Assembly (NCBI RefSeq): GCF_000143415.4
Contig: NW_003314432.1
Coordinates: 62,001 to 126,000 of the forward strand
Length of the DNA stretch: 64,000 nucleotides
Source: Selaginella moellendorffii
Lineage: Eukaryota > Plantae > Lycopodiophyta
Direction: 5' to 3'
A program made the position numbers and the translations under genes. A model generated the notes under the pieces. The model had not been told where the DNA came from. It did not search any database and worked only from the letters and a program-made list of their open reading frames with translations. This document shows, in pieces, positions 5,869 to 62,550 of the stretch; positions within the stretch are counted from its first letter, which is position 1; each line of letters begins with the position of its first letter.

Positions 5869-7287
5869 TCAAGTCTGAACTGCTCTGAAGATGTTTTCCA
5901 GCATCACATAAGGCAATGCATCACTCACAAGGCTGGACTGGCACGTAAATTCCGCAGCATGCATCCCTCGATTCATCTCCCCGTGGTTTTTGCATGCGGT
6001 AAGAAACGTTGCCCATGCAACTCCATCTGCTGGCAAAGGCATATTCTCTAGGACACCCTCGGCCTCTTTCAATCGCCCTAGTCGTCCGAGAGCATCAACA
6101 ATGCAGGTGTAGTGGTCTTGCGAAGGATCCAATCCATTGTCAAAGCTCATTGCCGTGAAGTAGCTTACTGCTTCCTTGACGAGCCCCAGATGGCTACACG
6201 CCGTCAAAACGATGGCAAACGCTGCCTTGTCGGGGTCAAAGCCGTGAAGAAACATCGCCCAAAAGAGCTGGATCGCAGAATACGCATGCCCGGTTTGGGC
6301 ATATGCTGCAAGAATCGTGTTCCAGGAGACCAAGTTCCAAGTTGGCATCTCATCGAACGCTTTCTTAGCATCACGAATATTTGCATCTAGAGCATATACC
6401 ACTAGAATTGTGTTCCATGAATAGGAATCCCAGCAGCAAACCAAAGAAAACGCCCGGATCGCCTCTTTGAAACGACCTCTCTGGGCATAAACAGCGATTA
6501 TCGCGTTCCATGAAACAAGATCTCTGCGTGGCATTTTTTCAAACAATTGTTTTCCTTGATCAGCATCACCGTTTTTCGCGTATGACTTGATCATAATCGT
6601 CCACGAAAGTACGCTGTGCTGAGGCATCCTATCAAACAAACTCTTGGCTTGAATCAAATCCCCATTTTGGGCATAGCAGCAGTGCATCGCCCCCCAGAGG
6701 ATCGCGTTTCGGTGGACAATCTCCTGGAAGACATCCTCCGCCTCCTCCATGAATCCATTCTCCGCAAACATGACGAGCATCACCGCGCGAGTGATGCTGT
6801 TCTTCTCGGGCATGGAATCAAACGCGGCCTTCGCATCACCCACTCGCCCGCGCTGCGCGAATCCCTGCACGAGGATCGTCCACGCTACCACATTCGTCTC
6901 GGGCATCCGATCCAGCACCTCTCTCGCTCGCCCAATCTCTCCGCCGCGAGCAAATCCCCGCAGCAGCGTCGCCCACGTCTTGCAGTTCCTTTCGGGCATC
7001 ACATCAAACACCGCCTTGCTTGATCCAATCCGCCCGCAATCGCCCAGCGCCTTGACCATCGCAGTGGAGGAAACTACGTCCCACACCGCCATTCGATCGA
7101 ACGCTGCCTTGGCCTCCCCCGGATGCCCACTCTCGGCATACGCGGTCGCGAGCGCCGTCCACGACGCGATGTTCTTGGCCGGCAATGCATCAAATATCCT
7201 TCTCGATTCCTCCAAATGCCCACACCGCGCGTAGACAACCAGCGTTTTATCCCACCAAGACGATGCCTTGTGAGCTACGCGCGCCAT
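5869..7287 (-). CDS. PLS-class pentatricopeptide repeat protein (S/SS-rich, ends in a truncated E domain, no DYW)
   Basis: 472-aa open ORF with tandem ~31-aa motifs (SWTALATAYAESGH..A...FDRM), P2-L2-S2 (LTACSHLGLV, HYTCIVDALGRLGRL), E1 (WATFLTACKNH) and a partial E2. Confidence 0.88.
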   Translation of the reverse strand: MARVAHKASSWWDKTLVVYARCGHLEESRRIFDALPAKNIASWTALATAYAESGHPGEAKAAFDRMAVWDVVSSTAMVKALGDCGRIGSSKAVFDVMPERNCKTWATLLRGFARGGEIGRAREVLDRMPETNVVAWTILVQGFAQRGRVGDAKAAFDSMPEKNSITRAVMLVMFAENGFMEEAEDVFQEIVHRNAILWGAMHCCYAQNGDLIQAKSLFDRMPQHSVLSWTIMIKSYAKNGDADQGKQLFEKMPRRDLVSWNAIIAVYAQRGRFKEAIRAFSLVCCWDSYSWNTILVVYALDANIRDAKKAFDEMPTWNLVSWNTILAAYAQTGHAYSAIQLFWAMFLHGFDPDKAAFAIVLTACSHLGLVKEAVSYFTAMSFDNGLDPSQDHYTCIVDALGRLGRLKEAEGVLENMPLPADGVAWATFLTACKNHGEMNRGMHAAEFTCQSSLVSDALPYVMLENIFRAVQT

Positions 7288-10910: not shown

Positions 10911-12592
10911 ATGAATTTCCATCTCTCTTTCTTGCTCCTCGAGATACTAGTGTTCTTGAGAGCTGTCGCCCTAAATTCGCCCCTCTCCGCCCAATTCCCT
11001 CATGGCGCCAGCTCCAGTTCAACTCGCGCCGCTCTTCCACTTCGGCGTCAACACATTCACGGACTCGGAGCGTGGATCCGGCCACGAATCGCCCTCCATC
11101 TTCAACCCGGAGCGATCTAATGCGTCGCAGTGGATGGACGCGGCTCAATCCGCGGGCGCGCAGCTCGTGATCCTCACGGTCAATCACCACGACGGGTTCT
11201 GCCTGTGGCCCTCGGCCTACACCAATTTCTCCGTGGCTAGCGCGAGGAGGGAAGGGGGATGTGGTGGCCGAGTTCGTGGCCGCCGCCAGGGAGCGTGGAT
11301 TGGACGTGGATGTGGCTTTTACCTCTCGCCATGGGATTTGCACGAGAGCTGCTATGGCGACACTCTTCTCTACAACGAGTTCTACTTGGCTCAGCTCCGA
11401 GAGCTTCTTACTGGGTGAGTGAGACATTCTTTGCTTCTTCTTCTTCACGCATTTTTCTTGGTGGCATGGTCACTGTGTGATATATTTGCATTTCCTCCAG
11501 CCCATCAAACGGTTTTAGCATTAGGAGCTCGCGAGCTTGTGGGCTTTTGTAGTTTTCATCTCTAGCAGCAGATGCCTTGACGCGGCATTCTGTTTTGGCG
11601 TGCAGATATGGGCCGATCTCCGAGGTGTGGCTGGATGGTGCGAAATCACCCACTGCAATGAACATGAGCTACGATTTTGAGCTCTGGTTTGACACGATTC
11701 ATCCCCGGTGGCAACATCTTTTCCGACACTGGCCCCGACATCCGATGGGTTGGGAACGAGTATGGCGAGGCCGGACAACCATGCTGGGCGATGGCGAACA
11801 GATCTTCCATTACGATCGGCAGGAGCGATGGCCAGTACGTAAAATCCATCCTTCCATGAGACTTTCGTTCTCGTGAAACTCGATCCAATTCGCAACATCG
11901 ACAGGTACTTGATGTCTGGAGAGAGTGCTGGAACCGACTGGCTCCCTCCGGAGTGTGATATCTCCATCAGGCCCGGTTGGTTTTGGCACAGGAACGAGGC
12001 TCCAAAATCCCTGGAGCAGCTGCTCGACGTTTTCTACAAATCATCCGCCAGGAACTGCTTGCTCCTGCTCAACGTCCCTCCAAACTCGTCGGGACTGATC
12101 GACGAATCCGACTTCCAGACGCTGGAGCGGTTTAGCTCCGCCATAGATTCCATCTTGAGCGTCAACTTAGCAGCGAATCCCTTGTCCGTGACAGCAAGCA
12201 GCGTTCGCAGCTCTTCGTTCGGGCCGAAGCAAATCCTTGACGAGCGTATGGAAACTTTCTGGGCTCCAATGCAAGGGGAGTCGACCGGCTGGATCGAGCT
12301 TGATCTTGGCAAGGTCTCAAAGTTCAACGCACTGGACATCCGAGAGCCAGTAAACATGGGACAAAGGGTCATGGAATATCTCGTCGAGGCATGCGACAGC
12401 GAGCTGGGCTGGTACCTGGTGAGCAACGGTAGCACCATTGGTTACAGGAAAGTGGATCGACTGGAAGAGGATCAAGTATGTGCTGCTCGCCTCATTCGAC
12501 TGCTGATTGACGCCTTGCGGGGAGATCCATTGATCTGCTTCTTTGGTTTGTACTTCGATATGTACAACCTCAGGCACTTGTCTTCTATTTAG
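10911..12592 (+). pseudogene. Alpha-L-fucosidase (GH29, FUC1-like), copy 1, frameshifted
   Basis: Signal-peptide-like start, FHFGVNTFTDSE, ILTVNHHDGFCLWPS, YLSPWD, EVWLDGA, GPDIRWVGNE, WLPPECDISIRPGWFWH, NCLLLLNVPPN and a C-terminal F5/8-like domain. Introns at ~11415-11605 and ~11835-11904. Several small deletions shift the frame. Confidence 0.9.
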
Positions 12593-13259: not shown

Positions 13260-15124
13260 GCATTGGGCTCGTCACTCCAAGATAATACACCTTTCAAATG
13301 GCTAACATAAAATACCAAATGAATTTTCACCCCAGCTGGTAGCCACACTCAATAAACCACCTACTGATGTGCTCCAGCACTTCATATAGACTAGCATACC
13401 AATGAAAAAGTTTATCACTCTTCCCATTCCACAAAGGCACTAAAGTGTTCTACTGCTCATTTGATAAAAAGATCACTCGCACAAAGATAAGATCACCCAC
13501 TTTATATTCCCAGAATTGGCGATGCTCATTAGCAAACTTCTCCGCTCTATCCTGAGCTATTTGCAAATTCTGTTTGCACACCACTAGAATTTCATCAAGT
13601 TCCGTAGCCAAATTAGTCACCTCTGAATCAAGCTTTTCTTAAGCATCCTTACTCAAATGCAATTCCAGCTCCACCGCTGTTTGAGGATGCCTTCCAAACA
13701 TTGCAAAGTAAAGATTTAATTTGGTTTCACTGTGTTAGCTATTGTTGTAGGCAAATTGCACCAATGGAAGATATAGATCCCACTATCCCTATTTTTGATC
13801 AATGCTACAACGTAGTATATCCTCCACCACTTGATTCACATGCTCGGTTTACTCATCTGTTTAAGGATGATCTCCATTTGAGAGTTTTAGAGTCACTTGC
13901 ATAGCGTTTGCAAAACTCTTCCAAAATCCACTAGTGAACTTTGAATCTCAATTGCTAACGATGTCCTCTGGCAAACCAAAATCAAGAAAGACCTTCTCCA
14001 AGTAGACCGCAACCAAGTCTAAGGCAGTGACACTCTTTTGAAGAGCCAACAACCGCACATACTTCGTTAAGCGATCCACTATGACCCATACTTGCTCCTT
14101 TTGCTTCTGTGTTTATGGCAAACAAATGATGAAGTCCATAAAGATACTACACTAATGGCTCTAAGGAATAAGTAAATGTTGCAAAAGTCCCCTTGGCTTC
14201 TCCTGTGGCACCTTTACCTATTGATAGAGCTCACATGACTTACAGTACTCAAGGATATTAGCCTTCATATTCCTCTAATAAAAATTATGCTTAATCAACT
14301 CATATATCTTCTTCCCCCCAAAATGATCAGCCTTTGAACAATCATGATAGTGGAATAAAACTTGAGTAATTAATGCATCCACCCGTGGCAAATACACATG
14401 GCCATTTTAGTAAAGAATCCCATCCACCAATGAGAAAGGTGCTTCTATCTGGGCTTGCAACGAGACCACCTCAACATCCTGAGCTTGAGCACGCTCAACT
14501 AATTGCCCAAACTTGCTAACCACCTTACTCAAATGATAATAGAACCATGTTTGTAATGTCATTACATGGCAAACACAAGATAAAGCATCTGCCACCATAT
14601 TCAATTTTCCCAGATAATGCTCAATAAGAAACTCCCCAAACTCCATGAGTTTGACCATCCAATGAGCTTACCTAGTATTCAACTCTTTTTGTGTGAAAAA
14701 ATATATAAGGGGTTTGTGATCTGTCAACACTGTGACCACTACACCATAAAGATAGTGTTGCCACGTCTGCAAAGTATGAACAATGAAGAGTAACTCTTAC
14801 TTATATATGGAATAACGTTGCTCCGCAGGATTCAAAGTTTGACTCTCATATGCAATAGGTTGTCCTTTTTGCATGAGAACTCCTCCTAGTGCATAACCAC
14901 TTGCATCACATGTCACCTCATAAGGTTTTGATGGATTAACAATGCGAAGCATTAGAGCCTTACTCAACAACCGTTTCAATGCCACAAAACTATCCTTATG
15001 TGGCTTCTTTCACTCGAATGGCACATCCTTGTGCAACAATTATATTAAAGGAATAGCCATCTCTGCAAACTTATGTTGAAATGTCGGTAGTAACTAGCCA
15101 TACCAAGGAAACTGCGTAACTCAG
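13260..15124 (-). mobile_element. Degenerate Ty3/gypsy pol fragment (RNase H-integrase)
   Basis: KPYEVTCDASGYALGGVLMQKGQPIAYES, GKLNMVADALS, SMDFIICLP, VDRLTKY, LPAGVKIHLVFYVSHLK. Truncated at 15124 by an LTR. Confidence 0.85.
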
Positions 15125-15780
15125 TGTCACGAATGTGACTTCAGGTATCAAAAGTTACCTATCGGCTAGTCCTTTCGAATATTTTTTCTTTACTGCCACG
15201 ACAGTAGGAGGTTAATATTGTTAAACCCTTTATTAATCCCTTTTATTCAAGTGTTAGTAAACTGGATTTTGCATCTGTACTTGGCCGGATGAGCATAAGG
15301 ATGGAATTCCTAAGTGTCTATTCAGCCAAACATATTTGGCCCAGCTTTTGAGTTCTTTTTTGCTCTGTCTTGCACTGGCTTGACAAGGACCCTTGCATAT
15401 TAAGATTAGTCCCTCAATATCGTTGGATGATAGCTTACCATATTTGCTAAACACCCTCACTATCATGCCCTTTGTGTTAATTTCATTTAAATCCCAAATA
15501 CTATTTATAGAAAGTGTCTAGATTTGCTCATTTGGCATATCTACGGAATGTAGAGATTGTCATGAACACAATGGTGTTCATTCTATGTCCAAATTCACAA
15601 TCTAAAGATATTCTATATTTAGTAAGCTTCAAGTTTGTCCCAAAGAGTAACTCTTGATACTAAGGGAGGCTTGGGTTGAAAACTCAAAGTGTGAAGGCCC
15701 ATGGAGGGTTTAAGTTCTGTTTCGTGGTTATTCTATGGTAAATCACTATAGGATAAAGGGTAAAAACTATGTGTGTTATA
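15125..15780 (+). repeat. LTR with an internal deletion (same family as the solo LTR at 49438-50545)
   Basis: Starts TGTCACGAATGTGACTTCAGGTATC, matching 49438. Ends ...aaatcactataggataaagggtaaaa...ttata. Lacks ~500 bp of the middle. Confidence 0.8.
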
Positions 15781-16479
15781 TTTTGTCTCAGAAGATATAA
15801 TATGATAATTAGTTGTTCTATTTAATAGTTTATGGCTTTATGCAATACCATATGTTCTTTGTGGTTTGCTTTAGATTGGTCTCTTGGGTTTGAGACATTA
15901 GTAGAATGTTGCTGACACGTGTTTAAGCAACTTGAGTTCCTTCGTATTATTGACTGGGATTTATTTAGATTAGCTAGTGTAATGGTTAGCATGACTAAAT
16001 GTTTGTTAGTCTTACCACATTCCTTCTGTTTTGTTGATTGTTGCTCGAGTTAGTTTTGATAGATTAGGATGTTATTTCCTTCAAGTGATACATTCGCGAG
16101 TATTTTGTTTATCAGTTAATAATACTTTGTATTCTTTGAGTTATCTTTAGTGAGTTGTTTGGCATGCTATTTACAATCTTTACTAATTAAGTTTTATCAT
16201 TGAGTTTTTTGATGATACACTGACTATTGAATTTTGTTGGATGGTGAATCCTATGTTTCCAAAAATAATGATCTTGGTGGTTCCTGTGCTCTACTACTAG
16301 TTTATCGAATGAAAACTTACTTAAAATACTTTTGTGTTCTCATCTAAGATATATTCACTGATAATTAAGTCTCTAAGATATCATTGTCTAATAACTTTGA
16401 TATTATTCATTTATTGATCTTTGAGTTTGGGCCAGTATAGGTAGATTGGCTTCAACACTTTATATGCATAGTGAAATCT

Positions 16480-17721
16480 TGCTGGACCCTTTATCATCCC
16501 CTTTTGTTCAAGTGTTAGTAAACTGAACTTTGCATATATACTTGGCCAGATGAGCATAAGGAAGGAATTCCTAAGTGTCTATTTAGTTGAGCATACTCGG
16601 CCCGGCTTGTTAGTTCTCTTTTGCTTTGTGTTGCACTGGCTTGACAAGAACCCTCGCGTATTGAGACTAATCCTTCAATATCGCTGGATGATAGCTTATC
16701 ATATCTGCCAAACACCCTTGCTATCATACTCTTTGTGTTAGTCTTATTTTAGTCCCAAATGCTATTTATAGAAAGTGTCTAGATTTGCTCATTTGGCATA
16801 TCTATGGAATGTAGAGATTGATTTGAACACAATGGTGTTTATCCTGTGTCCAAATTTGCAATCTAGTGCCATTCCATATTTAGTAAGTTTTGAGCTTGTC
16901 CTAGAGACTAACTCTTAATACTAAGGGAGGCTTAGGGTGAAAGCCCAAAGCATATGTTCCTCAGAGGGGGGGGGTTCCAAATGTATAGTAGGGATAGTGG
17001 GTAGTGGGTAGGTTGGGCATAACTAACTAACTTGAGGCATAGTATAGCTCCTGCTTGCGTGCCTGTCCTTGTTCTACGTCCAGCTTGGTTTAAGCCCAAG
17101 TTCCATTCAGAAAAAGATAAGTTTCCTCTCCTGGTATGTACACACACCTTAAAATTCTGTGTTTTCATTCTTTCCAGGTTGGAGTGATAGTGCGCATAGT
17201 TTCGCAGTTTCTTTGATTATTCTTCCAAGCTTTAGATCTTTGGATCGGAACCTTGTTCAGGGGAATTAGATGAAAAAGTTCAACTTTAAAAAAGAGACTA
17301 TTACATGCTAGCTAGTGGAGTACCCATGTCCTTGCGTTAGGCCACCAGTATGCCGAAATAGTGCCAAACTCCGTTTGGCTCCATTTTGTGTGCTAGTCCT
17401 CACATTGGGATGTTGGTTGCTCCAAAACTATTCCAAGTCGCTCCAGGCTTCTATCCCTTCACTCCTTGGGCTATATGCTTGGGAGTTGCTCCATGGTCTG
17501 GTTTCATCACTCCTTGGCTCCATGCTTAGGAGTTTGGCACTGTTCCTTCGTTTAGTGGCCCAAGGCTCTGAACCTCGGGTTCCACACCATTATCCTTTGG
17601 ACACGTGGCATGTGACATGTGGCATGTGTCACGTGGCATAAAGAGGGTTTAGGTTCCGCTTCATGGTGTTATCCTATAGTAAATCACCATAGGATAAAGG
17701 GACAAAACCACATGCACTACA
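16480..17721 (+). repeat. 5'-truncated LTR of the same family
   Basis: Aligns to 49520-50545 and ends ...ccacatgcactaca. Confidence 0.85.
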
Positions 17722-32788: not shown

Positions 32789-35700
32789 ATGGAGTTCAGG
32801 GATCCCACTTTCTGGTGGGACAACAGGTTCAAGAAGAAAAACAAGTTCTTCTCAGAGTCCTACCCGGATTTCAAACATGTTTCTACCGGAGAGAGCCTGT
32901 GGATCGCCAACAGGAAAACACCGACCTGGGTCTCTGCAAAACTCGAGTCGCTCGCTGACCCAGCTGTAGGTAAGGCCACCACGGCCCGCTACAACTCTCC
33001 ACATACCGCACCTGTAGCTGGTGATGAACCGGTGAGTTTAGGGAGGCTGATACACCGCGTGAGAGACTCAGCTGAGAGCAGATCCCTTTCTTTGGGAAAA
33101 CAAGCCCATGAAGCTGTGCTCAAGAGTGATGAGCACAAAAACAACATCTACTTGTTGACGGGATTGATCGATATGTACTGCAAGTGTGGCGAGCTTGAGG
33201 AGGCTCGCAAGATTTTCCACTCCATGGGAACTCGGAGTGTTGTGTCCTACAACGCGATCATCCAGGGCTGCGGCTCGAACGGGCAAGCTGAACTTGCTCT
33301 GGAGTACTACTCTGCCCTGAGAGCTTGTACCACCATTCAACCCAACGATCGGACACATGTCGCGGTGATCAGCGCCTGCTCCAGACTTGCTACCGAATCC
33401 AGCGAGAAGAGGGAGAGAGCTCTACGCATCGGGATGGAGATCCATTCAATGCTGAGCAAGGAGAAGAAACAGGTAGATCTGTTCGTGGCGACTTGCCTGG
33501 TAGACATGTACTGCAAGTGTGGCGAGCTTGAGGAGGCTCGCAAGATTTTCCACTCCATGGGAACCCGGAGTGTTGTGTCCTACAACGCGATCATCCAGGG
33601 CTGCGACACGAACGGGCAAGCTGAACTTGCTCTGGAGTACTACTCTACCCTGAGAGCTTGTACCTCCATTCAACCCAACGATCGGACACATGTCGCGGTG
33701 ATCAGCGCCTGCTCCACACTTGCTACCGAATCCAGCGAGAAGAGGGAGAGAGCTCTACGCATCGGGATGGAAGTCCATTCAGTACTGAGCAAGGAGAAGA
33801 AACATCTAGGTTTGTACATGGCGACTTGCCTGGTAGACATGTACTGCAAGTGTGGCGAGCTTGAGGAGGCTCGCAAGATTTTCCACTCCATGGGAACTCG
33901 GAGTGTTGTGTCCTACACCGCGATCATCCAGGGCTGCAACACGAACGGGCAAGCTGAACTTGCTCTGGAGTACTACTCTGCCCTGAGGGCTGATACGACC
34001 ATTCAACCCGACGATCGGACACATGTCGCGGTGATCAGCGCCTGCTCCACACTTGCTACCGAATCCAGCGAGAAGAGGGAGAGAGCTCTACGCATCGGGA
34101 TGGAAGTCCATTCAGTACTGAGCAAGGAGAAGAAACATCTAGGTCTGTACATGGCGACTTGCCTGGTAGACATGTACTGCAAGTGTGGTGAGCTTGAGGA
34201 GGCTTGCAAGATTTTCCACTCCATGGGAACTCGGAGTGTTGTGTCCTACACCGCGATCATCCAGGGCTGCAACACGAACGGGCGAGCTGAACTTGCTCTG
34301 GAGTACTACTCTGCCCTGAGAGCTGATAACACCATTCAACCCGACGATTGGACTTATGTCGTGGTGATCAGCGCCTGCTCCACACTTGCTACCGAATGCA
34401 GCGAGAAGAGGGAGAGAGCTCTACGCATCGGGATGGAGATCCATTCAATGCTGAGCAAGGAGAAGAAACAGCTAGATCTGTTTGAGGCGAATTGCCTGGT
34501 AGACATGTACTGCAAGTGTGGTGAGCTTGAGGAGGCTCGCAAGATTTTCCACTCCATGGGAACTCGGAGTGTTGTGTCCTACACCGCGATCATCCAGGGC
34601 TGCAACACGAACGGGCGAGCTGAACTTGCTCTGGAGTACTACTCTGCCCTGAGAGCTGATAACACCATTCAACCCGACGATCAGACTCATGTCGTAGTGA
34701 TCAGCGCCTGCTCCACACTTGCTACCGAATCCAGCGAGAAGAGGGAGAGAGCTCTACGCATCGGGATGGAGATCCATTCAATGCTGAGCAAGGAGAAGAA
34801 ACAGCTAGATCTGTTCGTGGCGAATTGCCTGGTAGACATGTACTGCAGGTGTGGCGAGCTTGAGGAGGCTCGCAAGATTTTCCACTCTATGGGAACTCGG
34901 AGTGTTGTGTCCTACACCGCGATCATCCAGGGCTGCAACACGAACGGGCGAGCTGAACTTGCTCTGGAGTACTACTCTGCCCTGAGAGCTGATAACACCA
35001 TTCAAGCTAATGCTTGCACCTACACCTGCGTCCTTGTTGCTTGCGGGAGTGTGATGGCGGTCAAGCTCGGGAGGGAGATTCACCAGCTGGCGAAGCATGA
35101 AGGGCTGCTGAAAAACAATCCAGTTCTGGGCTCCAGCCTGGTGAGCTTCTACGGCAAATGCGGCGATGTTGATTCTGCTCAGGAAGCGTTTGACGAGTGC
35201 CGAGCTCGGGACAACACGGGTCTCTGGAACTCTCTCATACAGGCTTACACTCTCCAGGGCCGATCGATTGAGGCCTTGGAGCGTTTCTATTCCATGACTC
35301 AGGAGGAGGGCTGTAAAGCTGACGATGTGAGTTTTGTCTCGGTGTTGAACGCTTGCAGCCATGGTGGTCTGGTGGGGAAAGGAAGGCAGCTTCTGGATGA
35401 AATGCCCAAGCAGTATGGAGTGAAGCCACGTCTGGAGCATTATGTGTGCCTGATCGATATGCTCGGGCGAGCTAACCTCCTCGATGAAGCTGTGAGAGTT
35501 CTCAGAGCCATGCCTTTTGAACCGAATGCAGTGGTTTGGACGTCCCTGCTCGGAGCCTGCCGGAAGTGGAAGAATTACACGATCGGCAAACTCGCGTTTG
35601 AGCGTCTTGTGGAGATGGATCCCAAGAGCGGCACACCTTACGCATTGATGGCCAATATATTTGGAAACCTGGGGATGCTCAGTGAAAGGGCCGCTGTTGT

Positions 35701-36148
35701 GGAGAGAATGAGAGGTGAAGGCAGCTTCAGGGAGCCCGGGAGAAGCTGGTGGACGGATGTTAGCTCAGGAAAAGTGCATTCTTTTTCTGTTGGGGATAGG
35801 AGTCACTCACAGAGCGACGAGATTGCGGCCAAGCTCAAGCAATTGTTGCTTAAAATGAAAGAGGAGGGGTATGTGAGCGATGTGATCAACGTTCTAAAAG
35901 ACATACCCGAGGAAGAGAAAGAGGATCACCTGTGTGGCCACAGCGAGAAGCTTGCGCTGGTGTGTGCTCTGGTGAACTCGCACCAGAAGGAGACCATCAG
36001 AATTGTGAAAAATCTCCGAGTTTGTGACGATTGCCATGCGGCCACTGCTCTCATCTCTAAGCTGGAAAAAAGGTTAATCATCTGCAAAGATGCCAGTCGG
36101 GTTCATGTGTTCCAGGATGGCAGATGTTCCTGTGACAACTACTTTTGA
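32789..36148 (+). CDS. PDF(OSB)-PLS-PPR-E1-E2-DYW:WW protein, putative C-to-U editing factor
   Basis: Uninterrupted frame (open from 32756, first ATG at 32789, 1119 aa). N-terminal WWDNR..K..YPDFKH..TGESLWI..P.WV, ~23 PLS motifs, E1 AVVWTSLLGACRKW, PGRSWWTD, HSEKLA, KNLRVCDDCH, HVFQDGRCSCDNYF. An upstream exon is possible. Confidence 0.92.
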   Translation: MEFRDPTFWWDNRFKKKNKFFSESYPDFKHVSTGESLWIANRKTPTWVSAKLESLADPAVGKATTARYNSPHTAPVAGDEPVSLGRLIHRVRDSAESRSLSLGKQAHEAVLKSDEHKNNIYLLTGLIDMYCKCGELEEARKIFHSMGTRSVVSYNAIIQGCGSNGQAELALEYYSALRACTTIQPNDRTHVAVISACSRLATESSEKRERALRIGMEIHSMLSKEKKQVDLFVATCLVDMYCKCGELEEARKIFHSMGTRSVVSYNAIIQGCDTNGQAELALEYYSTLRACTSIQPNDRTHVAVISACSTLATESSEKRERALRIGMEVHSVLSKEKKHLGLYMATCLVDMYCKCGELEEARKIFHSMGTRSVVSYTAIIQGCNTNGQAELALEYYSALRADTTIQPDDRTHVAVISACSTLATESSEKRERALRIGMEVHSVLSKEKKHLGLYMATCLVDMYCKCGELEEACKIFHSMGTRSVVSYTAIIQGCNTNGRAELALEYYSALRADNTIQPDDWTYVVVISACSTLATECSEKRERALRIGMEIHSMLSKEKKQLDLFEANCLVDMYCKCGELEEARKIFHSMGTRSVVSYTAIIQGCNTNGRAELALEYYSALRADNTIQPDDQTHVVVISACSTLATESSEKRERALRIGMEIHSMLSKEKKQLDLFVANCLVDMYCRCGELEEARKIFHSMGTRSVVSYTAIIQGCNTNGRAELALEYYSALRADNTIQANACTYTCVLVACGSVMAVKLGREIHQLAKHEGLLKNNPVLGSSLVSFYGKCGDVDSAQEAFDECRARDNTGLWNSLIQAYTLQGRSIEALERFYSMTQEEGCKADDVSFVSVLNACSHGGLVGKGRQLLDEMPKQYGVKPRLEHYVCLIDMLGRANLLDEAVRVLRAMPFEPNAVVWTSLLGACRKWKNYTIGKLAFERLVEMDPKSGTPYALMANIFGNLGMLSERAAVVERMRGEGSFREPGRSWWTDVSSGKVHSFSVGDRSHSQSDEIAAKLKQLLLKMKEEGYVSDVINVLKDIPEEEKEDHLCGHSEKLALVCALVNSHQKETIRIVKNLRVCDDCHAATALISKLEKRLIICKDASRVHVFQDGRCSCDNYF
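33170..35005 (+). repeat. Intragenic tandem repeat, 333-nt period, ~5.5 near-identical units (S31+P36+L44 aa)
   Basis: ATGTACTGCA recurs at 33173, 33506, 33839, 34172, 34505 and 34838. Confidence 0.97.
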
Positions 36149-37295
36149 AAACATGTCAGTGCTCTTTCTTGCAGTTATCCCTGGTTTTAAACCCTCTGTG
36201 AGTCAAGCAGAAACATGGGCCGCTGAGTGAGCATCAAAGAGTTTGGGTACCGGCAATTCTTCATACTAAGGCTTATTATCTGAATCTGGGTGCTCCGTTT
36301 TGGGGCACCTGTTAGCAGGTTTAGTCACGATTCTGCTACCAAAAAGAAATTTAAATTTAAGACAACGTGTCATCCTCCTTTTGCATAGTTTTAACTTTTA
36401 AATGTTAATTTTTTCTCTGTGAAGTTCAGGTTGACGGCGTTGCTGATAGCAAGTACCGCCTCATGTTCTGGGAGCAAGGTGATGGCGGCTTGTGGCATGA
36501 CCAACTTTGGGTTTGTGCTCCTAGAGCACGTTGAAGACGTGTGGAAGCTGGTGACGACGGCATTTGTTTCTTGCAACGTACTCACCAGTTCCTCAGCGAC
36601 ATCTTCCTTCCAGATTTTTTGAGCTTGTCGTGAGTGGTGACTTGCTTGCTCTCTCCTGTGATGAGCCTCTGGTGCCCAACCTCAAGGCTCTCTTGTGGAT
36701 GGAGCTAGCCCTACACAGTCAACCAGCAGATGCACAAATCGTTGAGAATTAGCAACAAGTGTGTATCATAGGCTCAGTGCGTAGTGTACTAGTGTATATG
36801 TACATGTGTTTCAGCTAAATATAATGGGCCAAATACACCGAAGAAAGAAGAGTAGAAACAAATTAAGAAATGTAAATTAAGAAGTGCAAAAGAAATGAAA
36901 ATAAAAATTGTCCATCCTCATCAGTTTACTGAAATTAAGTTGGATTCAATTCTTCCAGCTCCAAATATTGTGTGATTGAGTTGTAAGTTAATTAATAGTA
37001 GAAAATAAGAAAAAAAAAACAAACATTGAAAAAATAGTGTTTGATAATATCTTCTTTGCTTTTAGTTTTTTGTTTTTGAAAGAAAATTAGTGGGGAGTGC
37101 TGGTAAAGATATCTTTGCCGTTTATTGGTGGTTAATTAAATGAGCATGCTTAGAGATGTTTATAAGAGTTTAGCTCTGGACCAAGAGTTATCCGAAAATT
37201 AAAGTTCAAAATTTATGTTTTCCTTATTTGCACAATAACTTAAGCTAAAGTAATATACTTACCCGTATTTTTTATGGGAAAATTATTATTCGCAC

Positions 37296-40400: not shown

Positions 40401-42122
40401 CAGAACAAGATGGAAACACAGGAGGAAATAGTGGGGGAACAAAAGTAATTTAAGCAAAAGTAGAAGTAGAGGGACGAAGAGGTACGGAAGTGAAAGGAAT
40501 GGATGAAACATAAGGAAGTATGAGACAAGGGGGAGAAGCCTCAAAGTCACACTTGGCATGATTGCGTTGCAACCAATCCATACCAAGAATGAGGTCAAAA
40601 GCTTGACTCGGCACCACCTGCAACGATTGCAGCTCAAGCTCGAGATCGCCCACACGCACAACCAGGTCTGCCTCATCTCGTGCACATGTATGTGTATGAC
40701 CGTTGCCATAAAGAATGAAAACGGGGTCCGCCGCATGATGCAAGTGTAGACGACAATGTGTGGCAATAGGTCGAGCAATAGAAGATAAACTCGAACCTCT
40801 ATTAACCAACACAGAGAGAATAATAGGAGACCTCTTGTTATAAAAATGAGCTTGGAAAGTAAACACTGGATGAACCGGTGCCGAGTGAACCCCTTGATGA
40901 TACTGCCGAAAGAAAGATGGAGGGGTCACTAACTTATTCGCGCAAGGTCCCTTCATTACTTGTGCGACTCCTCGTTTCCCGGATGCACTGCGGTGTCCAA
41001 ACCTTCCACTGCAGCAGCACCAACGGGACGTTGCTGACGCTAAGGTCTCCACCCAGGAAATGGAGGTCGCCAATCTGGAAAGTGCCGACAACGCCGATAA
41101 GTATGACTAACTTCATCACACACCCAGCAACAAACATCACGGCCACGACCACGCCCTCGCCCTTGGCCTTGGACTCGAGTAGCAACAGCATCAACCTCCA
41201 TTAGAACAGGACCATCACTCATAGAAAGTGGAGCGGAAGGACGTGCAGCAAGAAGTGGAAGAGGTGACGTCTCATAACGTTGTGCCAAGCAAAGAGCATC
41301 TTCAAGGGTAGCAGGAGCAAGTGCATGCACAAGTCTGACAAAATCTTGACGAAGTGCTGGCCACAACATTCCTAACTTCATCCACTCCGACATATTGGGC
41401 TCCGCACGAAACAAAAGACTTCAAAAACGAATGCCAAATTGCATCACTAACTTAGATGGCCCTTGGCAAAGACGATGCAATTGTTGGAAGGCATCATCAC
41501 AATTGTCAGCATGTCCGAAGGCGCATTTGAAGACGTCCGGAAGAACACTCCAATCCCCACAAGTGGCCGCGCTCAATCCATTATACCACTGCAACGCCAT
41601 CCCTTGGAGACACATGGGAAACTTACGCAAACATCGAGCATCATCCCACGAATGATATGTGGCAATCACCGTGAAGTGATTGAACCAATGGTACACATCA
41701 TCCCCAAGATTCCCACGAAAGAACTCTGGCCGAACGTGAGGATTGGCACCAAGAGCAGGAGGAGTTGGACCACGTGCCGTGAATGCCACCATCAATTGAG
41801 TTTGGTTGTTCATTTGCAAACGCATAGCATCAAGCAATTGGACCAACTGCTGCTCTAGAGTCAAAGGAGGAGATTGCTAATCTGCCATGAAGATAAACGA
41901 AAAAGAAAGAGCAAAAGAAGAGAAATGACAAAAAGCTAGAAGGAAATGGTAGATCTAGATAATGCAAAAAGCTAGATCTAAACCAAAATCTTGAAAAAGA
42001 AGAACAAAAGAAAAAAAAATGGAAAAAGCTAAATCTAAACAATGCAAAAGCTAGATCTAAACCAAAATCCCAAATCCAAGCACTCTTCAGGGACAATCAA
42101 AAGTGCCCTTCACTTCCACCAA

Positions 42123-42451: not shown

Positions 42452-43236
42452 ATGGCAGCAGCCACAGAGATTTATGAGAAATGGGGCCGATCGAGCTGGA
42501 TCTGGGCCTGCTCGTGCTCTATCTTCACCAACAGGAGGAGGAAGAGGTGCCCATGGAGGGAGAGGTGGCCATGGAGTGGGAGGAGGGCGCGGGGTGGCCG
42601 GGGTTGGCTGCAGATCTCTGAATCTGGCCCCGGGAGGATTAGGCCATGGTTCTGAGGCGGCTCAAGGAGGGGGTGCCCTGGGAGGAGGAGGCCATGGTTC
42701 TACTCTAGGAGGAGGACGCCACGGTTCTTCTCCGGGAGGAGGCCAAGCCTCAGTGAGCCACAACGGGAGGAGTCCAAGCCGCGCCCAGAGGAGCCCAAGC
42801 CACGTCTGGAGGAGTTCCCCTGGAGGGGAGGAGGCCATGGATCATCGCCAGGAGGAAGCCACGTCTGGAGGAGTTCCCCTGGAGCACAGCGTGCCGGGAG
42901 CTCCAACTGCTTTGAGAACCAGAGATGGCGGTGAGTTTACATTTCTTAGGTTACATGCATGCATGAGTGATTGAGAGCTCCCGGCAGGGTCATGAAGAAG
43001 AGGGAGATGACAGCGTCCCTGATCTGGAACAAGACCCGGATGCTCACTTGGAGGAGCTCGACCACGAGGCTGTCCAGTTTGTGGATACCTTGGGTTTTGC
43101 TGCACCTGCTGCTGCGAAGAGAACCCGGGGAAAGAACTGGAACCATGCTGAGACCATGCTCCTGATTGATCTCGTTTGGGAAAAACATCTCGCAAAGATT
43201 GCGGGGGAGGGAGGAGCAGCCAGCATGTTCTCATGA
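42452..43236 (+). pseudogene. Harbinger Myb/SANT-like ORF remnant with Gly-rich repeats
   Basis: KRTRGKNWNHAETMLLIDLVWEK is the start of a Myb/SANT helix and is truncated soon after. Upstream are degenerate GGAGGAGG repeats and a duplicated agccacgtctggaggagttcccctggag. Confidence 0.6.
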
Positions 43237-43299
43237 CGAAGACACAGCGCTGGAATCTCATCTTTCACCCTTTTGCTTTAGGGTTTAAATGCACATTGC

Positions 43300-44631
43300 G
43301 GATGACAAGAGCCCCGCTGCCAGAGGAAGAAGACCATGAACTTGAGGTTCGTCGGGCTGTGATTGGGAGGAGGTTTTGCATCGGCCTGTGGTGGGTGAAG
43401 CCTCGAAATGTCACCACCTGGAGTAAGTTTTCTTTGGAGTATTACGATGTGGGGAGGTGGAAGAGGAAACTTCAGATGGAGAAGAGGACCTTCTTCACCA
43501 TTTGTGGCATGCTGGAGAGCGAGATCCAGAAGCAAGATACCGGTTGGAGGAGTGTGGTGCCGGTGGATGTTCGACTGGGGGTAACTTTGTACAAGCTTTT
43601 CAAGAACACAGATTACTTGGATCTAGCAGACAAGTTCGGCATCGGGGAGTCCACAGCTCATGAGATTGTCATGGACACTACTGTGGCAATTGTCAAGTGT
43701 CTCAGGTACAAGATTCATTTTCCTTCAACCGCCAAGGAGGTTCAAGCTGTTACTGCTGGCTTTCAACAAGTGACAGGTACATTTTCTTATGTTTTTTGGA
43801 TTGTTATAAGTTTTGATGACCAATAGGAACCCGACTGCCTAATGTTGCTGGGGCGATCGACTACTAGACTGGACGGCAAGAGCTACTATGACTGGAAGCA
43901 GTGGTACTTGGTCATCTTGCAAGGGGTTTGTGATGCCCAGAAGAGGTTCCTCAGTGTCTACGCTGGGTGGCCAGGATGGTTTTAAAATGTTCTTTTTGCT
44001 TTCAGGACGCATCCATGACATGAGGGTTTTTCGTAATTCAACCCTCAAGAACAAGATTGTAGCAAGGGAGCTGCTGACATCACCCGCGATGTTAGCTTAT
44101 GATGATAGGATCAAGCCATACCTAGTGGGGGACAAAGGGTACCAACTCCAGCAGCATCTGATGATTCCACACACAAGTAAGTCTTCTTCATTCTACTTTC
44201 TTTTGTTCACTTGTTTTGGTTGTTGCTCAGCTCCGAACCCGACACCATCCAAGGCAGCTTTCAACCTTCATCACCACCTTGCTCAGATTGTTATTGAGCA
44301 AGCATTTGGACTTCTTAAAATGAAGTTCAGATGCTTGGATCAAAAACAAAGAATCCAGCCAAAGTACCATCCCAACATCATCAAGAGTTGTTGCATCTTG
44401 CACAATTTCTTGATTGATGTTGGGGAGACTGATCTTCGGGCGGAGATCCAAGCTTGGAGGAAAGAGGTGAAATGGCTCAAGGACCAGGACCTCTTTGTTG
44501 ATTACAGTGATCCCGAGCAATTGGAAGGGGAGCCTCATGAGGAGTTGCACAGTCCAGAGGATGCGAAAGAGGTTAGAGAGAACCTCACGTTTTCCCTCTG
44601 TCTTTGCCAGTGGCGCTTGTGTTTGCTTTGA
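43300..44631 (+). pseudogene. Harbinger (HARBI1-like) transposase with introns, disrupted
   Basis: MEKRTFFTICGML, RLGVTLYKL, LADKFGIGESTA, LPNVAGAID, LQGVCDAQKRFLSVYAGWPG, IHDMRVFRNS, YLVGDKGY, VIEQAFGLLKMKFRCL, CCILHNF. Confidence 0.88.
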
Positions 44632-45083: not shown

Positions 45084-45480
45084 AGGTGCTAGAGGAGAGC
45101 TGTTGTAGGAGGAGTGCTAGAGGAGTTGGAGGAGAGCTGTTGCAGGAGAAGTGCTGGAGGAGCTGGAGAGCTGCTATAGGAGGAGTGCTGGAGGAGCTGG
45201 AGAGCTGCTATAGGAGGAGTGCTGGAGGAGCTGGAGGAGACTCAATGCACAAGGGGTTTTGGAGCAGCTAGAGGGTGAGAAAGAATGATTTGATGAAAAT
45301 AAAATAAAAACTGAAAAATCCAAGAGTAGGATTGGCAAAAGTACAATGTGGAAGAGAGTTGTTGCAGGAGGAGCACTAGAGGACATGGAGGAGAGTTGCT
45401 ACAGGAAGAGTGTTGGAGGGAGGAGATATGTTGCATTGGAGGAAAGTAAGAGCCACTAGAGGAGTTGGGCACTAGAGGAA
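45084..45480 (+). repeat. GA-rich degenerate minisatellite (~34-bp unit ggaggagtgctggaggagctggagagctgctata)
   Basis: About 4-5 units at 45084-45240 and more diverged units at 45350-45480. Confidence 0.75.
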
Positions 45481-61453: not shown

Positions 61454-62550
61454 GACATTCTTTGCTTCTTCTTCACGCATTTTTCTTGGTGGCATGATCA
61501 CTGTGTGATATGTTTGCATTTGCTCCAGCCCATCAAACGGTTTTAGCATTAGGAGCTCGCGAGCTTGTGGGCTTTTGTAGTTTTCATCTCTAGCAGCAGA
61601 TGCCTTGACGCGGCATTCTGTTTTGGCGTGCAGATATGGGCCGATCTTCGAGGTGTGGCTGGATGGTGCGAAATCACCCACTGCAGTGAACATGAGCTAC
61701 GATTTTGAGCTCTGGTTTGACACGATTCATCCCCGGTGGCAACATCTTTTCCGATGCTGGCCCCGACATCCGATGGGTTGGGAACGAGTATGGCGAGGCT
61801 GGACAACCATGCTGAGCGATGGCGAACAGATCTTCCATTACGATTGGCAGGAGCGATGGCCAGTACGTAAAATCCATCCTTCCATGAAACTTTCGTTCTC
61901 GTGAAACTCAATCCAATTCGCAACATCAACAGGTACTTGATGTCTTGAGAGAGTGCTGGAACCGGCTGGCTCCCTCCGGAGTGCGATATCTCCATCAGGC
62001 CCGGTTGGTTTTGGCACAGGAACGAGGCTCCAAAATCCCTGGAGCAGCTGCTCGACGTTTTCTACAAATCATCCACCAGGAACTGCTTGCTTCTGCTCAA
62101 CGTCCCTCCAAACTCGTCGGGACTGATCGACGAATCTGACTTCCAGACGCTGGAGCGGTTTAGCTCCGCCATAGATTCCATCTTCAGCGTCAACTTAGCA
62201 GCGAATCCCTTGTCCGTGACAGCAAGCAGCGTTCACAGCTCTTCGTTCGGGCCGAAGCAAATCCTTGATGAGCGTATGGAAACTTTCTGGGCTCCAATGC
62301 AAGGGGAGTCAACCGGCTGGATCGAGCTTGATCTTGGCAAGGTCTCAAAGTTCAACACACTGGAGATCCGAGAGCCAGTAAACATGGGACAAAGGGTCAT
62401 GGAATATCATGTCAAGGCATGGGACAGCGAGCTGGGCTGGTACCTGGTGAGCAACAGTAGCACCATTTGGGGGGGGGGAGGGATCCATTTATCTGCTTCT
62501 TTGGTTTATACTTCGATATATACAACCTGAGGCACTTGTCTTCTATTTAT
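60981..62550 (+). pseudogene. Alpha-L-fucosidase (GH29) copy 2
   Basis: Matches 10926-12592. It has lost its ATG, has TGA at ~61946, and has a deletion with a G-run at ~62468. Confidence 0.88.

What the first reader, a model, noticed from the sequence alone, without database searches (positions are those of the whole stretch)
33170..35005. TALE-like PPR array: near-identical 333-nt triplets whose base-specifying residues vary
Seen: ~5.5 almost identical S-P-L units in which several of the few differences hit PPR-code positions (5/last). P motifs are N/N, N/N, T/D, T/D, T/D, T/N. S motifs are T/S x4 then N/S x2. The downstream S is S/N and P2 is N/D. Established code: TN/TS/SN=A, TD=G, NS=C, NN=C/U, ND=U. 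Inference: recent tandem amplification plus code-residue switching is generating a new editing specificity. The predicted target is about 5'-AYn AYn AGn AGn CGn CAn AUn n-nnn-C-3', with the last PPR motif at -4.
Basis: partly seen in the sequence, partly recalled or inferred. Interest (0 to 1): 0.8.

Follow-up and report, generated by a model that had tools for sequence, protein, structure and literature searches.

The report
Shuffled repeat blocks in RNA-editing gene
A spikemoss gene for an organelle RNA-editing enzyme reads RNA through six almost identical three-part modules that differ at letter-choosing residues, and sister genes carry other numbers and orders of the same modules; this hints at how new editing enzymes arise quickly, but no target was tested.

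Summary
Window 33173-35005 is a 333-nt tandem repeat (5.5 copies, 96% matches, no indels). It lies in one intact, intron-less ORF (32789-36148, +) for a PLS-class PPR-DYW protein of Selaginella moellendorffii or a very close relative.

Six sister genes in the public assembly hold 3.6 to 6.6 of the same units, all in open frames, each with a different string of code residues. Code positions are enriched among polymorphic columns:
- window alone: P=0.03
- 39 units of seven genes: P=0.002 (about 0.03 with linked blocks counted once)
- non-repeated motifs: P=0.009, all N/D swaps at 'last' positions

However, 21 of the window's 24 variable residue columns are not code positions. Variants move as linked blocks (Rm at least 12 per 333 nt), and code sites are shuffled no more than synonymous sites. 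This resembles the evolution of restorer-of-fertility-like (RFL) PPR genes more than a TALE.

The E/DYW end is under purifying selection (omega about 0.2). The target prediction, expression of this copy and its unit number by long reads were not tested. The scan found the same pattern before in neighbouring paralogues (s1-361228, s1-385106, s1-385185).

The parts
32789..36148 (+). Whole gene: intact intron-less ORF of 1119 residues from the first ATG (the ORF is open from 32756), encoding a PLS-class PPR-DYW protein
   Evidence: ORF list. Pfam: PPR_2 E=1.7e-85, E_motif 4.9e-9, Eplus 2.2e-5, DYW_deaminase 7.5e-32.
32789..33025 (+). N-terminal region without PPR motifs. It contains the short 'PDFKH...LWI' stretch that other readers of the scan call an OSB-type PDF motif. 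There is no obvious transit peptide.
   Evidence: Translation. No Pfam family even at E<=10. The stretch is conserved in paralogues B, C, E and G, altered in D (LDFKH), and lost through a net 81-nt deletion in L001. The PDF reading was not tested here.
33026..33145 (+). Leading L-like motif in front of the array
   Evidence: By eye, it aligns with the L motif of the units. This is inference.
33146..35011 (+). Array of six S(31 aa)-P(36 aa)-L(44 aa) units of 333 nt. The sixth is S+P only. Units start at 33146, 33479, 33812, 34145, 34478 and 34811.
   Evidence: TRF 33173-35005, period 333 x5.5, 96% matches. Unit table. DNA identity 92.5-97.4%.
33158..34825 (+). S-motif position 5 codons, at unit start +12 to +14 in each unit: ACG/ACT (T) in units 1-4, AAT (N) in units 5-6. 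S-last is S in all six units.
   Evidence: Codon table.
33251..35011 (+). P-motif code codons. Position 5 (unit start +105 to +107): AAC (N) in units 1-2, ACC (T) in units 3-6. Last position (unit start +198 to +200): AAC (N), AAC (N), GAC (D), GAC (D), GAC (D), AAT (N).
   Evidence: Codon table. P-last travels with P30/P31 as one linked block.
35012..35527 (+). Non-repeated terminal motifs: L (36 aa), S (32 aa, S/N), P2 (36 aa, N/D), L2 (36 aa), S2 (32 aa, V/N)
   Evidence: Among seven paralogues, 15 of 172 columns vary. Three of those are 'last' code positions, all N/D swaps. The N at S2-last (nt 35525-35527) is private to this window's copy.
35528..35731 (+). E1 and E2 motifs
   Evidence: Pfam E_motif at residues 940-998 of the 1130-residue translation. 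Boundaries are by my own count.
35732..36148 (+). DYW cytidine-deaminase domain with stop codon. It has a 'PGRSWW' box, HSE and CDDCH zinc-site signatures, and ends in NYF instead of DYW.
   Evidence: PF14432 matches profile positions 1-92 of 93. End-to-end alignment to the synthetic PPR-DYW 9kfx (E=1.1e-50) and to the OTP86 DYW domain 7o4e (E=4e-31), with HSE and CxDCH aligned.

Best explanation
The window holds one intact member of a young, multi-copy subfamily of Selaginella PLS-class PPR-DYW proteins, which are putative organellar C-to-U RNA-editing factors.

Its RNA-binding tract was built by tandem amplification of a 333-nt S-P-L triplet (in standard terms P1-L1-S1). It keeps being remodelled by unequal crossing-over and gene conversion between units, both within and between paralogues. 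Three specificity positions (S5 T/N, P5 N/T, P-last N/D) exist as two alleles each. They are dealt out in linked blocks, so every paralogue has its own number of units (3.6-6.6) and its own string of code residues, and therefore a different predicted RNA target.

Inferred mode of action, not shown here:
- Each S and P motif reads one base, and the L motifs contribute little.
- S2 sits at position -4.
- The DYW domain deaminates the C downstream.

For this copy the published code predicts 5'-AYn AYn AGn AGn CGn CAn AUn n-nnn-C. The excess of changes at code positions, including N/D swaps outside the repeat, fits selection for retargeting, or at least relaxed constraint on it, while the catalytic end is conserved.
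For: - Gene anatomy and domains.
- Repeat.
- Seven paralogues with open frames, 3.6-6.6 units and seven different code strings.
- Mosaic structure: 67% of informative site pairs show all four gametes, Hudson-Kaplan Rm=12 within 333 nt, and P30-P31-P36 and L31-L44 move as blocks.
- Six of the eight combinations of S5/P5/P-last occur in full units. A seventh (N-N-D) is read from the last half unit of G.
- Code-site enrichment: P=0.031 in the window. Across 39 units the ranks are 6, 8, 10 and 28 of 111, permutation P=0.002. In the non-repeat motifs, 3 of 6 code sites fall among 15 of 172 variable columns, P=0.009, all N/D.
- Purifying selection on the C-terminal 378 codons: omega 0.18-0.23 for W against the others. 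pN/pS between units is 0.66-0.92.
- L001 and L007 share a 99.7-100% identical downstream flank and a C-terminal dS of 0.012, yet hold 6.6 and 4.6 units. They are probably two haplotypes with different copy numbers.
Against: - No editing target, organelle location or expression of this particular copy was shown.
- The code-site enrichment is modest once linkage is allowed for: about P=0.03, by my arithmetic.
- Code sites are not more recombined than synonymous sites.
- The ratio of nonsynonymous to synonymous segregating sites in all 39... in the 29 units tested does not differ significantly from the C-terminal part (51:32 against 28:30, P=0.17). The window's units alone do differ (30:9, P=0.006).
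- Letters private to this copy at 35060, 35099 and 35525 were not seen in any of four public runs, and no contig spans the array.
- The N-terminus lacks an obvious transit peptide.
Confidence: 0.65

Rival explanations
1. Neutral birth-and-death. The cluster is a redundant, recombination-prone gene family, and unit gain, loss and shuffling have no functional consequence. Code positions vary more simply because they are the least constrained positions of any PPR motif. This copy may be on its way to becoming a pseudogene.
For: - pN/pS between units is 0.66-0.92, close to neutral.
- Code sites are shuffled no more than synonymous sites.
- Most variable columns are not code positions.
- One family member (L006) is a C-terminal fragment only.
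- L001 has lost the start codon and the N-terminal motif.
- S. moellendorffii has thousands of PPR genes (3,861 counted in PMC13386178).
Against: - All seven full-length copies keep open frames of 919-1278 codons.
- The C-terminal omega is 0.09-0.5, and about 0.2 for this copy.
- Three of only 15 replacements in the non-repeat PPR motifs hit 'last' positions (P=0.009).
Confidence: 0.25
2. Assembly artefact. The array in the window is mis-assembled, with collapsed, expanded or chimeric units, so its unit number and order are not real.
For: - No contig in four public runs spans the array.
- Three letters private to this copy were not found in those runs.
- The older assembly has an N gap inside one paralogue's array (L003 10431-10661).
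Against: - The window has no N in 64 kb, and the frame stays open through 5.6 units that carry unit-specific substitutions.
- Six other loci of an independent assembly show the same architecture with open frames.
- A contig of run X1 (35639-36300) carries three letters private to this copy.
Confidence: 0.05
3. The protein is not a site-specific editing factor. Its periodic S-P-L tract, together with the N-terminal OSB-like motif, binds trinucleotide-periodic nucleic acid, for example the trinucleotide microsatellites of the mitochondrial genome or its transcripts.
For: - The predicted target is periodic in threes, (A/C)(Y/U/A/G)n.
- S. moellendorffii mtDNA carries 57 trinucleotide microsatellites, for example AGC17 and ACC9 (PMC5654404).
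- Other readers note an OSB-type ssDNA-binding motif at the N-terminus.
Against: - The code strings are not homogeneous repeats of a single triplet.
- The deaminase signatures are intact and under purifying selection.
- No Pfam support for the N-terminal motif.
- No binding data.
Confidence: 0.05

Closest known systems
Restorer-of-fertility-like (RFL) PPR gene clusters of angiosperms (for example the rice chromosome 10 cluster; PMC5075784)
   Same: Both show clustered, highly similar PPR paralogues and chimeric genes. Whole motifs are gained and lost by unequal crossing-over and gene conversion. Diversity is high at positions 5 and last, so predicted RNA targets change quickly (one search compared).
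   Different: RFL proteins are P-class, with 35-residue motifs and no deaminase. They act on mitochondrial CMS transcripts. Here the genes are PLS-class with E and DYW domains, the exchanged module is a 111-residue S-P-L triplet, and the host is a lycophyte with extreme C-to-U editing.
TAL effector repeat arrays
   Same: Both are tandem near-identical modules that read one nucleic-acid letter each through a few residues. Module number and order vary between paralogues.
   Different: In this array only 3 of 24 variable residue columns are specificity positions, and units differ by 3-7% in DNA. One module covers three letters, one of which (L) is poorly specified. The target is RNA, not DNA.
Synthetic consensus PLS-DYW editing factors (for example PDB 9kfx; PMC8110955)
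   Same: In the designed proteins, identical P-L-S triplets differ only at code residues in front of a P2-L2-S2-E1-E2-DYW end. This natural tract comes close to that layout, and its C-terminal 182 residues align end to end with 9kfx (E=1.1e-50).
   Different: This is a natural gene. The L motif has 44 residues, differences are not limited to code residues, and activity is untested.
Ordinary Selaginella PPR-DYW proteins (for example P0004, P0006, P0008)
   Same: Same domain order. P0008 shares the 'SWW' box after PG in the DYW domain, the long L motifs and an N-terminal PDFKH stretch.
   Different: Their triplets are only 44-55% identical to one another, against a median of 86% here. Their C-terminal identity to this gene is about 50%.

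Membership tests
PLS-class PPR-DYW RNA-editing factor | Tandem PPR motifs of alternating P, L and S length classes, ending in P2-L2-S2 | tested here: met
   Pfam PPR families match. My own parse gives S 31, P 36 and L 44 residues x6, then L 36, S 32, P2 36, L2 36, S2 32.
PLS-class PPR-DYW RNA-editing factor | E1/E2 (E, E+) motifs between the PPR tract and the deaminase | tested here: met
   PF20431 E_motif E=4.9e-9. PF20430 Eplus E=2.2e-5, score 24.6 against a cut-off of 24.
PLS-class PPR-DYW RNA-editing factor | Full-length DYW deaminase domain with the HxE and CxxCH zinc-site signatures | tested here: met
   PF14432 E=7.5e-32, profile positions 1-92 of 93. HSE and CDDCH align with 9kfx and 7o4e. 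The name-giving last three residues are NYF rather than DYW; this is a conservative variant shared by six of the seven paralogues (B ends NCF).
PLS-class PPR-DYW RNA-editing factor | Import into mitochondria or plastids | not testable with these tools
   No targeting predictor is available. The N-terminus starts directly with the conserved MEF/MEWKTFF-RDPTFWWDNR stretch.
PLS-class PPR-DYW RNA-editing factor | Editing of a defined C whose upstream sequence fits the motif code | not testable with these tools
   No Selaginella organelle genome or editome could be fetched, so the target string is a prediction only.
RFL-type rapidly evolving PPR cluster | P-class PPR protein of the RFL clade | tested here: not met
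   This gene is PLS-class with E and DYW domains. It is therefore an analogue in its mode of evolution, not a member.
RFL-type rapidly evolving PPR cluster | Clustered near-identical paralogues with motif gain/loss and chimeric structure | tested here: met
   - L004 holds a full copy a few kb downstream of a DYW-carrying gene model.
- Family gene models sit on five scaffolds; the six full-length sister copies analysed are on three.
- Copies have 3.6-6.6 units.
- Rm=12.
RFL-type rapidly evolving PPR cluster | Excess diversity at positions 5 and last | tested here: met
   P=0.031, 0.002 and 0.009. The effect is modest after allowing for linkage.
TALE-like array | Repeat-to-repeat differences essentially confined to the specificity residues | tested here: not met
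   21 of 24 variable residue columns in the window, and 16 of the 19 most polymorphic columns across 39 units, are not code positions.

The most novel reading that the evidence does not exclude
The subfamily is a natural, self-reprogramming editing-factor scaffold. Recombination among near-identical S-P-L triplets, under diversifying selection, continually produces new target specificities.

The three-letter period of the tract (two read letters and one free letter) is functional. With S2 at -4, the L motifs fall on wobble positions when the edited C is at codon position 2. Alternatively, the tract tracks the trinucleotide microsatellites typical of this species' mitochondrial genome. In either case the nuclear array and its organellar targets would co-evolve in copy number and sequence. 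This would be an RFL-like nuclear-organelle arms race in a hyper-editing lycophyte.
Probability: 0.12. Interest if true: 0.75.

Novelty: new variant of a known kind. Interest (0 to 1): 0.45.

Why it matters
How plants with thousands of editing sites acquire matching site-recognition factors is an open question. A family of editing-type genes whose RNA-reading tract is made of exchangeable near-identical triplets would be a concrete route to new specificities. The family shows differences in unit number even between probable haplotypes, and N/D swaps at code positions that correspond to transitions in the target RNA.

It also gives a natural counterpart to designer PLS-DYW editors. That allows a ready experiment: the paralogues differ at a few known residues and in unit number, so their targets can be compared directly.

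There is a practical point too. The public gene models of this family are wrong, because predicted introns cut out repeat units. Counts and motif analyses of Selaginella PPR genes based on those models will miss this.

Tried and rejected
- **Reads (3,701 letters laid, under the 6,000 limit).** All runs are kept as short Logan contigs. No piece spans the array and paralogues mix at 98% likeness. Neither the unit number nor the expression of this copy could be settled. Two runs guessed to be RNA cover the coding part of the family, and an adapter-tagged contig end lies at 32729. I do not treat this as proof of transcription.
- **Word-based protein searches with the full length.** These missed the family because its gene models are too short. 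A search with the C-terminal 378 residues found 12 models. None is this copy (best 97-98%), so the window's counterpart in GCA_000143415.2 was not identified.
- **Pfam on the N-terminal 119 residues.** Nothing at E<=10, so the 'PDF motif' reading of other notes stays untested here.
- **blastp self-comparison.** It gave no off-diagonal hits and was replaced by pairwise alignment of triplets.
- **Comparison of segregating nonsynonymous and synonymous sites in the repeat and the C-terminus.** Not significant for 29 units of five genes (P=0.17); significant only for the window's six units (P=0.006).
- **Idea rejected: code sites escape homogenisation or are specially reassorted.** Their four-gamete incompatibility (23-25 of 30) is no higher than that of synonymous sites such as L3.3 (26 of 30).
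- **Literature.** I found no paper in the held library describing near-identical PLS triplets in Selaginella. The library is incomplete; Cheng et al. 2016 and Gutmann et al. 2020 could not be read.
- **Target scan of organelle editomes.** Not possible, because no organelle sequence was reachable with the tools.
Full report
**Observation**

Tandem Repeats Finder reports a single array at 33173-35005: period 333, 5.5 copies, 96% matches, no indels. It lies in frame within one long ORF on the + strand. The ORF is open from 32756, has its first ATG at 32789, and its stop codon ends at 36148. Pfam reads the product as PPR repeats (PPR_2 E=1.7e-85) followed by E (4.9e-9), E+ (2.2e-5) and a full DYW deaminase domain (7.5e-32, profile positions 1-92 of 93).

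I split the protein at the S-motif anchor. This gives six units of 111 residues, each S 31 + P 36 + L 44.
- S motifs: T/S x4, then N/S x2
- P motifs: N/N, N/N, T/D, T/D, T/D, T/N
- downstream S: S/N
- P2: N/D

Units are 92.5-97.4% identical in DNA. Median protein identity between triplets is 86%, against 48-53% in two ordinary Selaginella PPR-DYW proteins.

**Anatomy**

- 32789-33025: an N-terminal stretch with no Pfam match. Other readers of the scan call it an OSB-type PDF motif. I did not test that.
- 33026-33145: a leading L-like motif.
- 33146-35011: the array.
- 35012-35527: non-repeated L, S, P2, L2 and S2.
- 35528-35731: E1 and E2.
- 35732-36145: the DYW domain.

The last 182 residues align end to end with the synthetic PPR-DYW structure 9kfx (E=1.1e-50) and with the OTP86 DYW domain 7o4e (E=4e-31). 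The HSE and CxDCH signatures are in place. The protein ends in NYF rather than DYW. From memory, the 'PGRSWW' box corresponds to the PG/WW subtype of C-to-U type DYW domains. That is recalled, not tested.

**Organism and family**

The closest database protein is P0151 of Selaginella moellendorffii, 98% identical over the C-terminal 378 residues. P0151 is a 617-residue gene model on GL377646.1. At that locus (L001) the DNA holds an uninterrupted 1209-codon ORF with 6.5 units. The model's predicted introns simply cut out repeat units.

The C-terminal search found 12 such shortened models on five scaffolds. I fetched seven loci. Six hold full-length open frames: L001, L002, L003, L004, L005 and L007, labelled A, B, C, D, E and G. 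L006 is a C-terminal fragment.

None of these loci is the window's own copy. Identity over the gene is 94-97%, and the best protein match is 97-98%. The window's copy is the most divergent of the seven, with a C-terminal dS of 0.053-0.079 against the others. Notes of the scan place three more paralogues within about 35 kb of the window. I could not read them.

**Do the differences fall on code positions?**

In the window's six units, 24 of 111 residue columns vary and 7 more vary only synonymously. Three of the four S/P code positions (S5, P5, P-last) are among the 24 (P=0.031). With position 2, or with L5/L-last added, the count is 4 of 6 (P=0.019).

With 39 units from seven genes, the four code positions rank 6, 8, 10 and 28 of 111 in residue diversity (permutation P=0.002). 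These columns are linked in blocks. Counting each polymorphic block once, I expect about 0.7 blocks to contain a code site and see 3, which gives P of about 0.03 (my arithmetic).

An independent test comes from the non-repeated motifs L-S-P2-L2-S2. Only 15 of 172 columns vary among the seven genes. Three of them are the 'last' positions of S, P2 and S2, all N/D swaps (P=0.009). A fourth N/D swap sits at L-last. The N at S2-last is private to the window's copy.

By the published PPR code (recalled), an N/D swap at 'last' changes A to G after T5, or C/U to U after N5. That corresponds to a transition in the target.

So the enrichment is real but modest. It is far from the TALE pattern: 21 of the window's 24 variable columns, and 16 of the 19 most polymorphic columns across the family, are not code positions.

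**How the variants are distributed**

Among 29 units of five genes there are 31 informative nucleotide sites. 67% of site pairs show all four gametes, and the Hudson-Kaplan minimum is 12 events within 333 nt. Variants travel in short blocks:
- P30-P31-P36 ('CT..N' or 'DN..D')
- P12-P13
- L31 to L44
- S2-S3

Code sites are incompatible with 23-25 of 30 other sites. Synonymous site L3.3 reaches 26 and L13.2 reaches 28. Code sites are therefore reassorted as passengers of block exchange, not specially.

Six of the eight combinations of S5/P5/P-last occur in full units, and a seventh occurs in the last unit of G. The code strings (S5 S-last - P5 P-last) are:

| Copy | Units in order |
|---|---|
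| W | TS-NN TS-NN TS-TD TS-TD NS-TD NS-TN |
| A | TS-NN TS-ND NS-TN TS-TD NS-TD TS-TD NS-TD |
| B | TS-NN TS-ND NS-TN TS-TN TS-ND TS-TD NS-TD |
| D | TS-NN TS-NN TT-ND TS-TN |
| E | TS-NN TS-TD NS-TN TS-TN TS-TD |
| G | TS-ND TS-ND NT-TD TS-TD NS-ND |

C is interrupted by an assembly gap.

**Age and selection**

Synonymous divergence between units (0.056-0.077) is about the same as between paralogues (0.012-0.079). Units W1, W4 and W5 are 97.9-98.7% identical to L001 units 1, 4 and 5. Units of C, D and A5 match W4 and W5 as well or better. So amplification looks as old as the gene duplications, not more recent, and later exchanges changed unit number and order.

The C-terminal 378 codons give omega 0.18-0.23 for W against each of the other six genes (0.09-0.50 over all pairs). 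This shows purifying selection on the E/DYW end. Between units pN/pS is 0.66-0.92, and still 0.66 with code sites removed. That indicates relaxed or diversifying evolution of the whole unit.

A count of segregating sites gives 51 replacement to 32 silent in the 29 units, against 28:30 in the C-terminus (P=0.17). For the window's units alone it is 30:9 (P=0.006).

**Copy-number change is ongoing**

L001 and L007 share downstream flanks that are 99.7-100% identical, and their C-terminal dS is 0.012. Yet they hold 6.6 and 4.6 units with different code strings. The public assembly is known to contain both haplotypes (recalled from Banks et al. 2011). These two are therefore most likely haplotypes of one locus that differ by two units. 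This is an inference.

**Reads**

The best public runs hold about half of the sampled words. All four runs laid are Logan contigs, and no piece spans the array. The window's private letters at 35060, 35099 and 35525 were not seen in any run. A contig of X1 (35639-36300) does carry the private letters at 35853, 35874 and 35961.

The source plant may therefore differ from those sequenced in these runs. The exact unit number in the window is not independently confirmed. Runs X8 and X16 (RNA by guess only) cover the coding part of the family but not the flanks, and one X8 contig ends in an adapter at 32729. This hints at transcription of some family member and proves nothing for this copy.

**Most likely mechanism**

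Shown here:
- An intact PLS-DYW gene whose tract is a young triplet array.
- A family with variable unit number and block-shuffled code residues.
- A conserved catalytic end.

Inferred from established knowledge of PPR-DYW proteins:
- The S and P motifs each read one base, and the L motifs add little.
- S2 aligns to -4.
- The DYW domain converts the downstream C to U in an organelle transcript. C-to-U is the only editing type found in S. moellendorffii mitochondria (PMC5654404).

I could not test it because no organelle genome was reachable.

By arithmetic, the L motifs fall at -5, -8, -11 and so on. These are wobble positions when the edited C is at codon position 2.

**Comparison with what is known**

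The mode of evolution matches that of RFL genes of angiosperms: clusters of similar PPR genes, chimeric structure, motif gain and loss by unequal crossing-over, and high diversity at positions 5 and 35 (PMC5075784). RFL proteins, however, are P-class and lack a deaminase.

The layout resembles designer PLS-DYW editors made from identical triplets (9kfx; PMC8110955).

I found no paper in the held library describing near-identical PLS triplets or this dynamic in editing-type PPR genes. Key papers on Selaginella PPR motifs were not readable, so prior description cannot be excluded.

The scan itself had already noted the same pattern in neighbouring paralogues: s1-361228 with a follow-up, and s1-385106 and s1-385185 as first-reader notes.

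**Verdict**

This is a real feature. It is a new variant of a known kind: RFL-like evolution in a PLS-DYW editing-factor family. Interest is moderate, and the functional claim is still untested.

Noticed in passing
L001 1967-5596, with gene models P0151 and P0239-P0248: The NCBI gene models of this family in GCA_000143415.2 are wrong. Predicted introns cut out repeat units or the whole array: for example, a 617-residue model where the DNA has an open 1209-codon frame, and 364-residue models that keep only the C-terminus. Surveys of Selaginella PPR genes based on these models will miss the arrays.
   Followed up: yes
window 32789-32940; L001 1981-1994: The N-terminus carries a conserved FRDPTFWWDNR...YPDFKH...LWI stretch that other notes call an OSB-type PDF motif. 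Pfam finds nothing there. Paralogue L001 has a net 81-nt deletion that removes the start codon and this stretch, yet its frame stays open downstream.
   Followed up: partly
window 5869-7287 (-): A second, unrelated PPR ORF of 472 residues (PPR E=7e-69, no E or DYW domain). Similar sequence lies downstream of the paralogues in L001 (15193-15596, 96%) and L007 (18119-19083, 93%).
   Followed up: partly
L001 against L007: These two loci on different scaffolds have 99.7-100% identical downstream flanks but only 93-96% identity in the gene and upstream, and differ by two repeat units. They are probably two haplotypes, with exchange from paralogues inside the gene.
   Followed up: partly
L003 10431-10661: An assembly gap (a run of N) sits inside the repeat array of one paralogue in the older assembly, so the unit number there is unknown.
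   Followed up: no
window 40450-41091 (-), 43176-44631 (+): Transposon remains: a retroviral-type aspartyl protease fragment, and an HTH_Tnp_4 plus DDE_Tnp_4 (PIF/Harbinger-like) transposase in two ORFs.
   Followed up: no
window 11873-12592 (+), similar DNA at 61908-62467: An ORF with an alpha-L-fucosidase end and an F5/8 type C domain. Similar DNA recurs near the window's end and beside paralogue L002 (a gene at 14084-16904 with Ferritin_2 and F5_F8_type_C). It appears to be part of the duplicated segment.
   Followed up: no
window 33068-33358, 33446-33691, 34805-35440 (-): Antisense ORFs of 81-211 residues run through the array. They repeat because the DNA repeats, and have no independent support.
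   Followed up: no
window 45094-45236: A 34-nt tandem repeat, 4.1 copies, 89% matches.
   Followed up: no
window 32729: In run X8 (RNA by guess) a contig starts here with Illumina adapter sequence, and depth is zero upstream. This may be a transcript 5' end about 60 nt before the ATG, for some member of the family.
   Followed up: no
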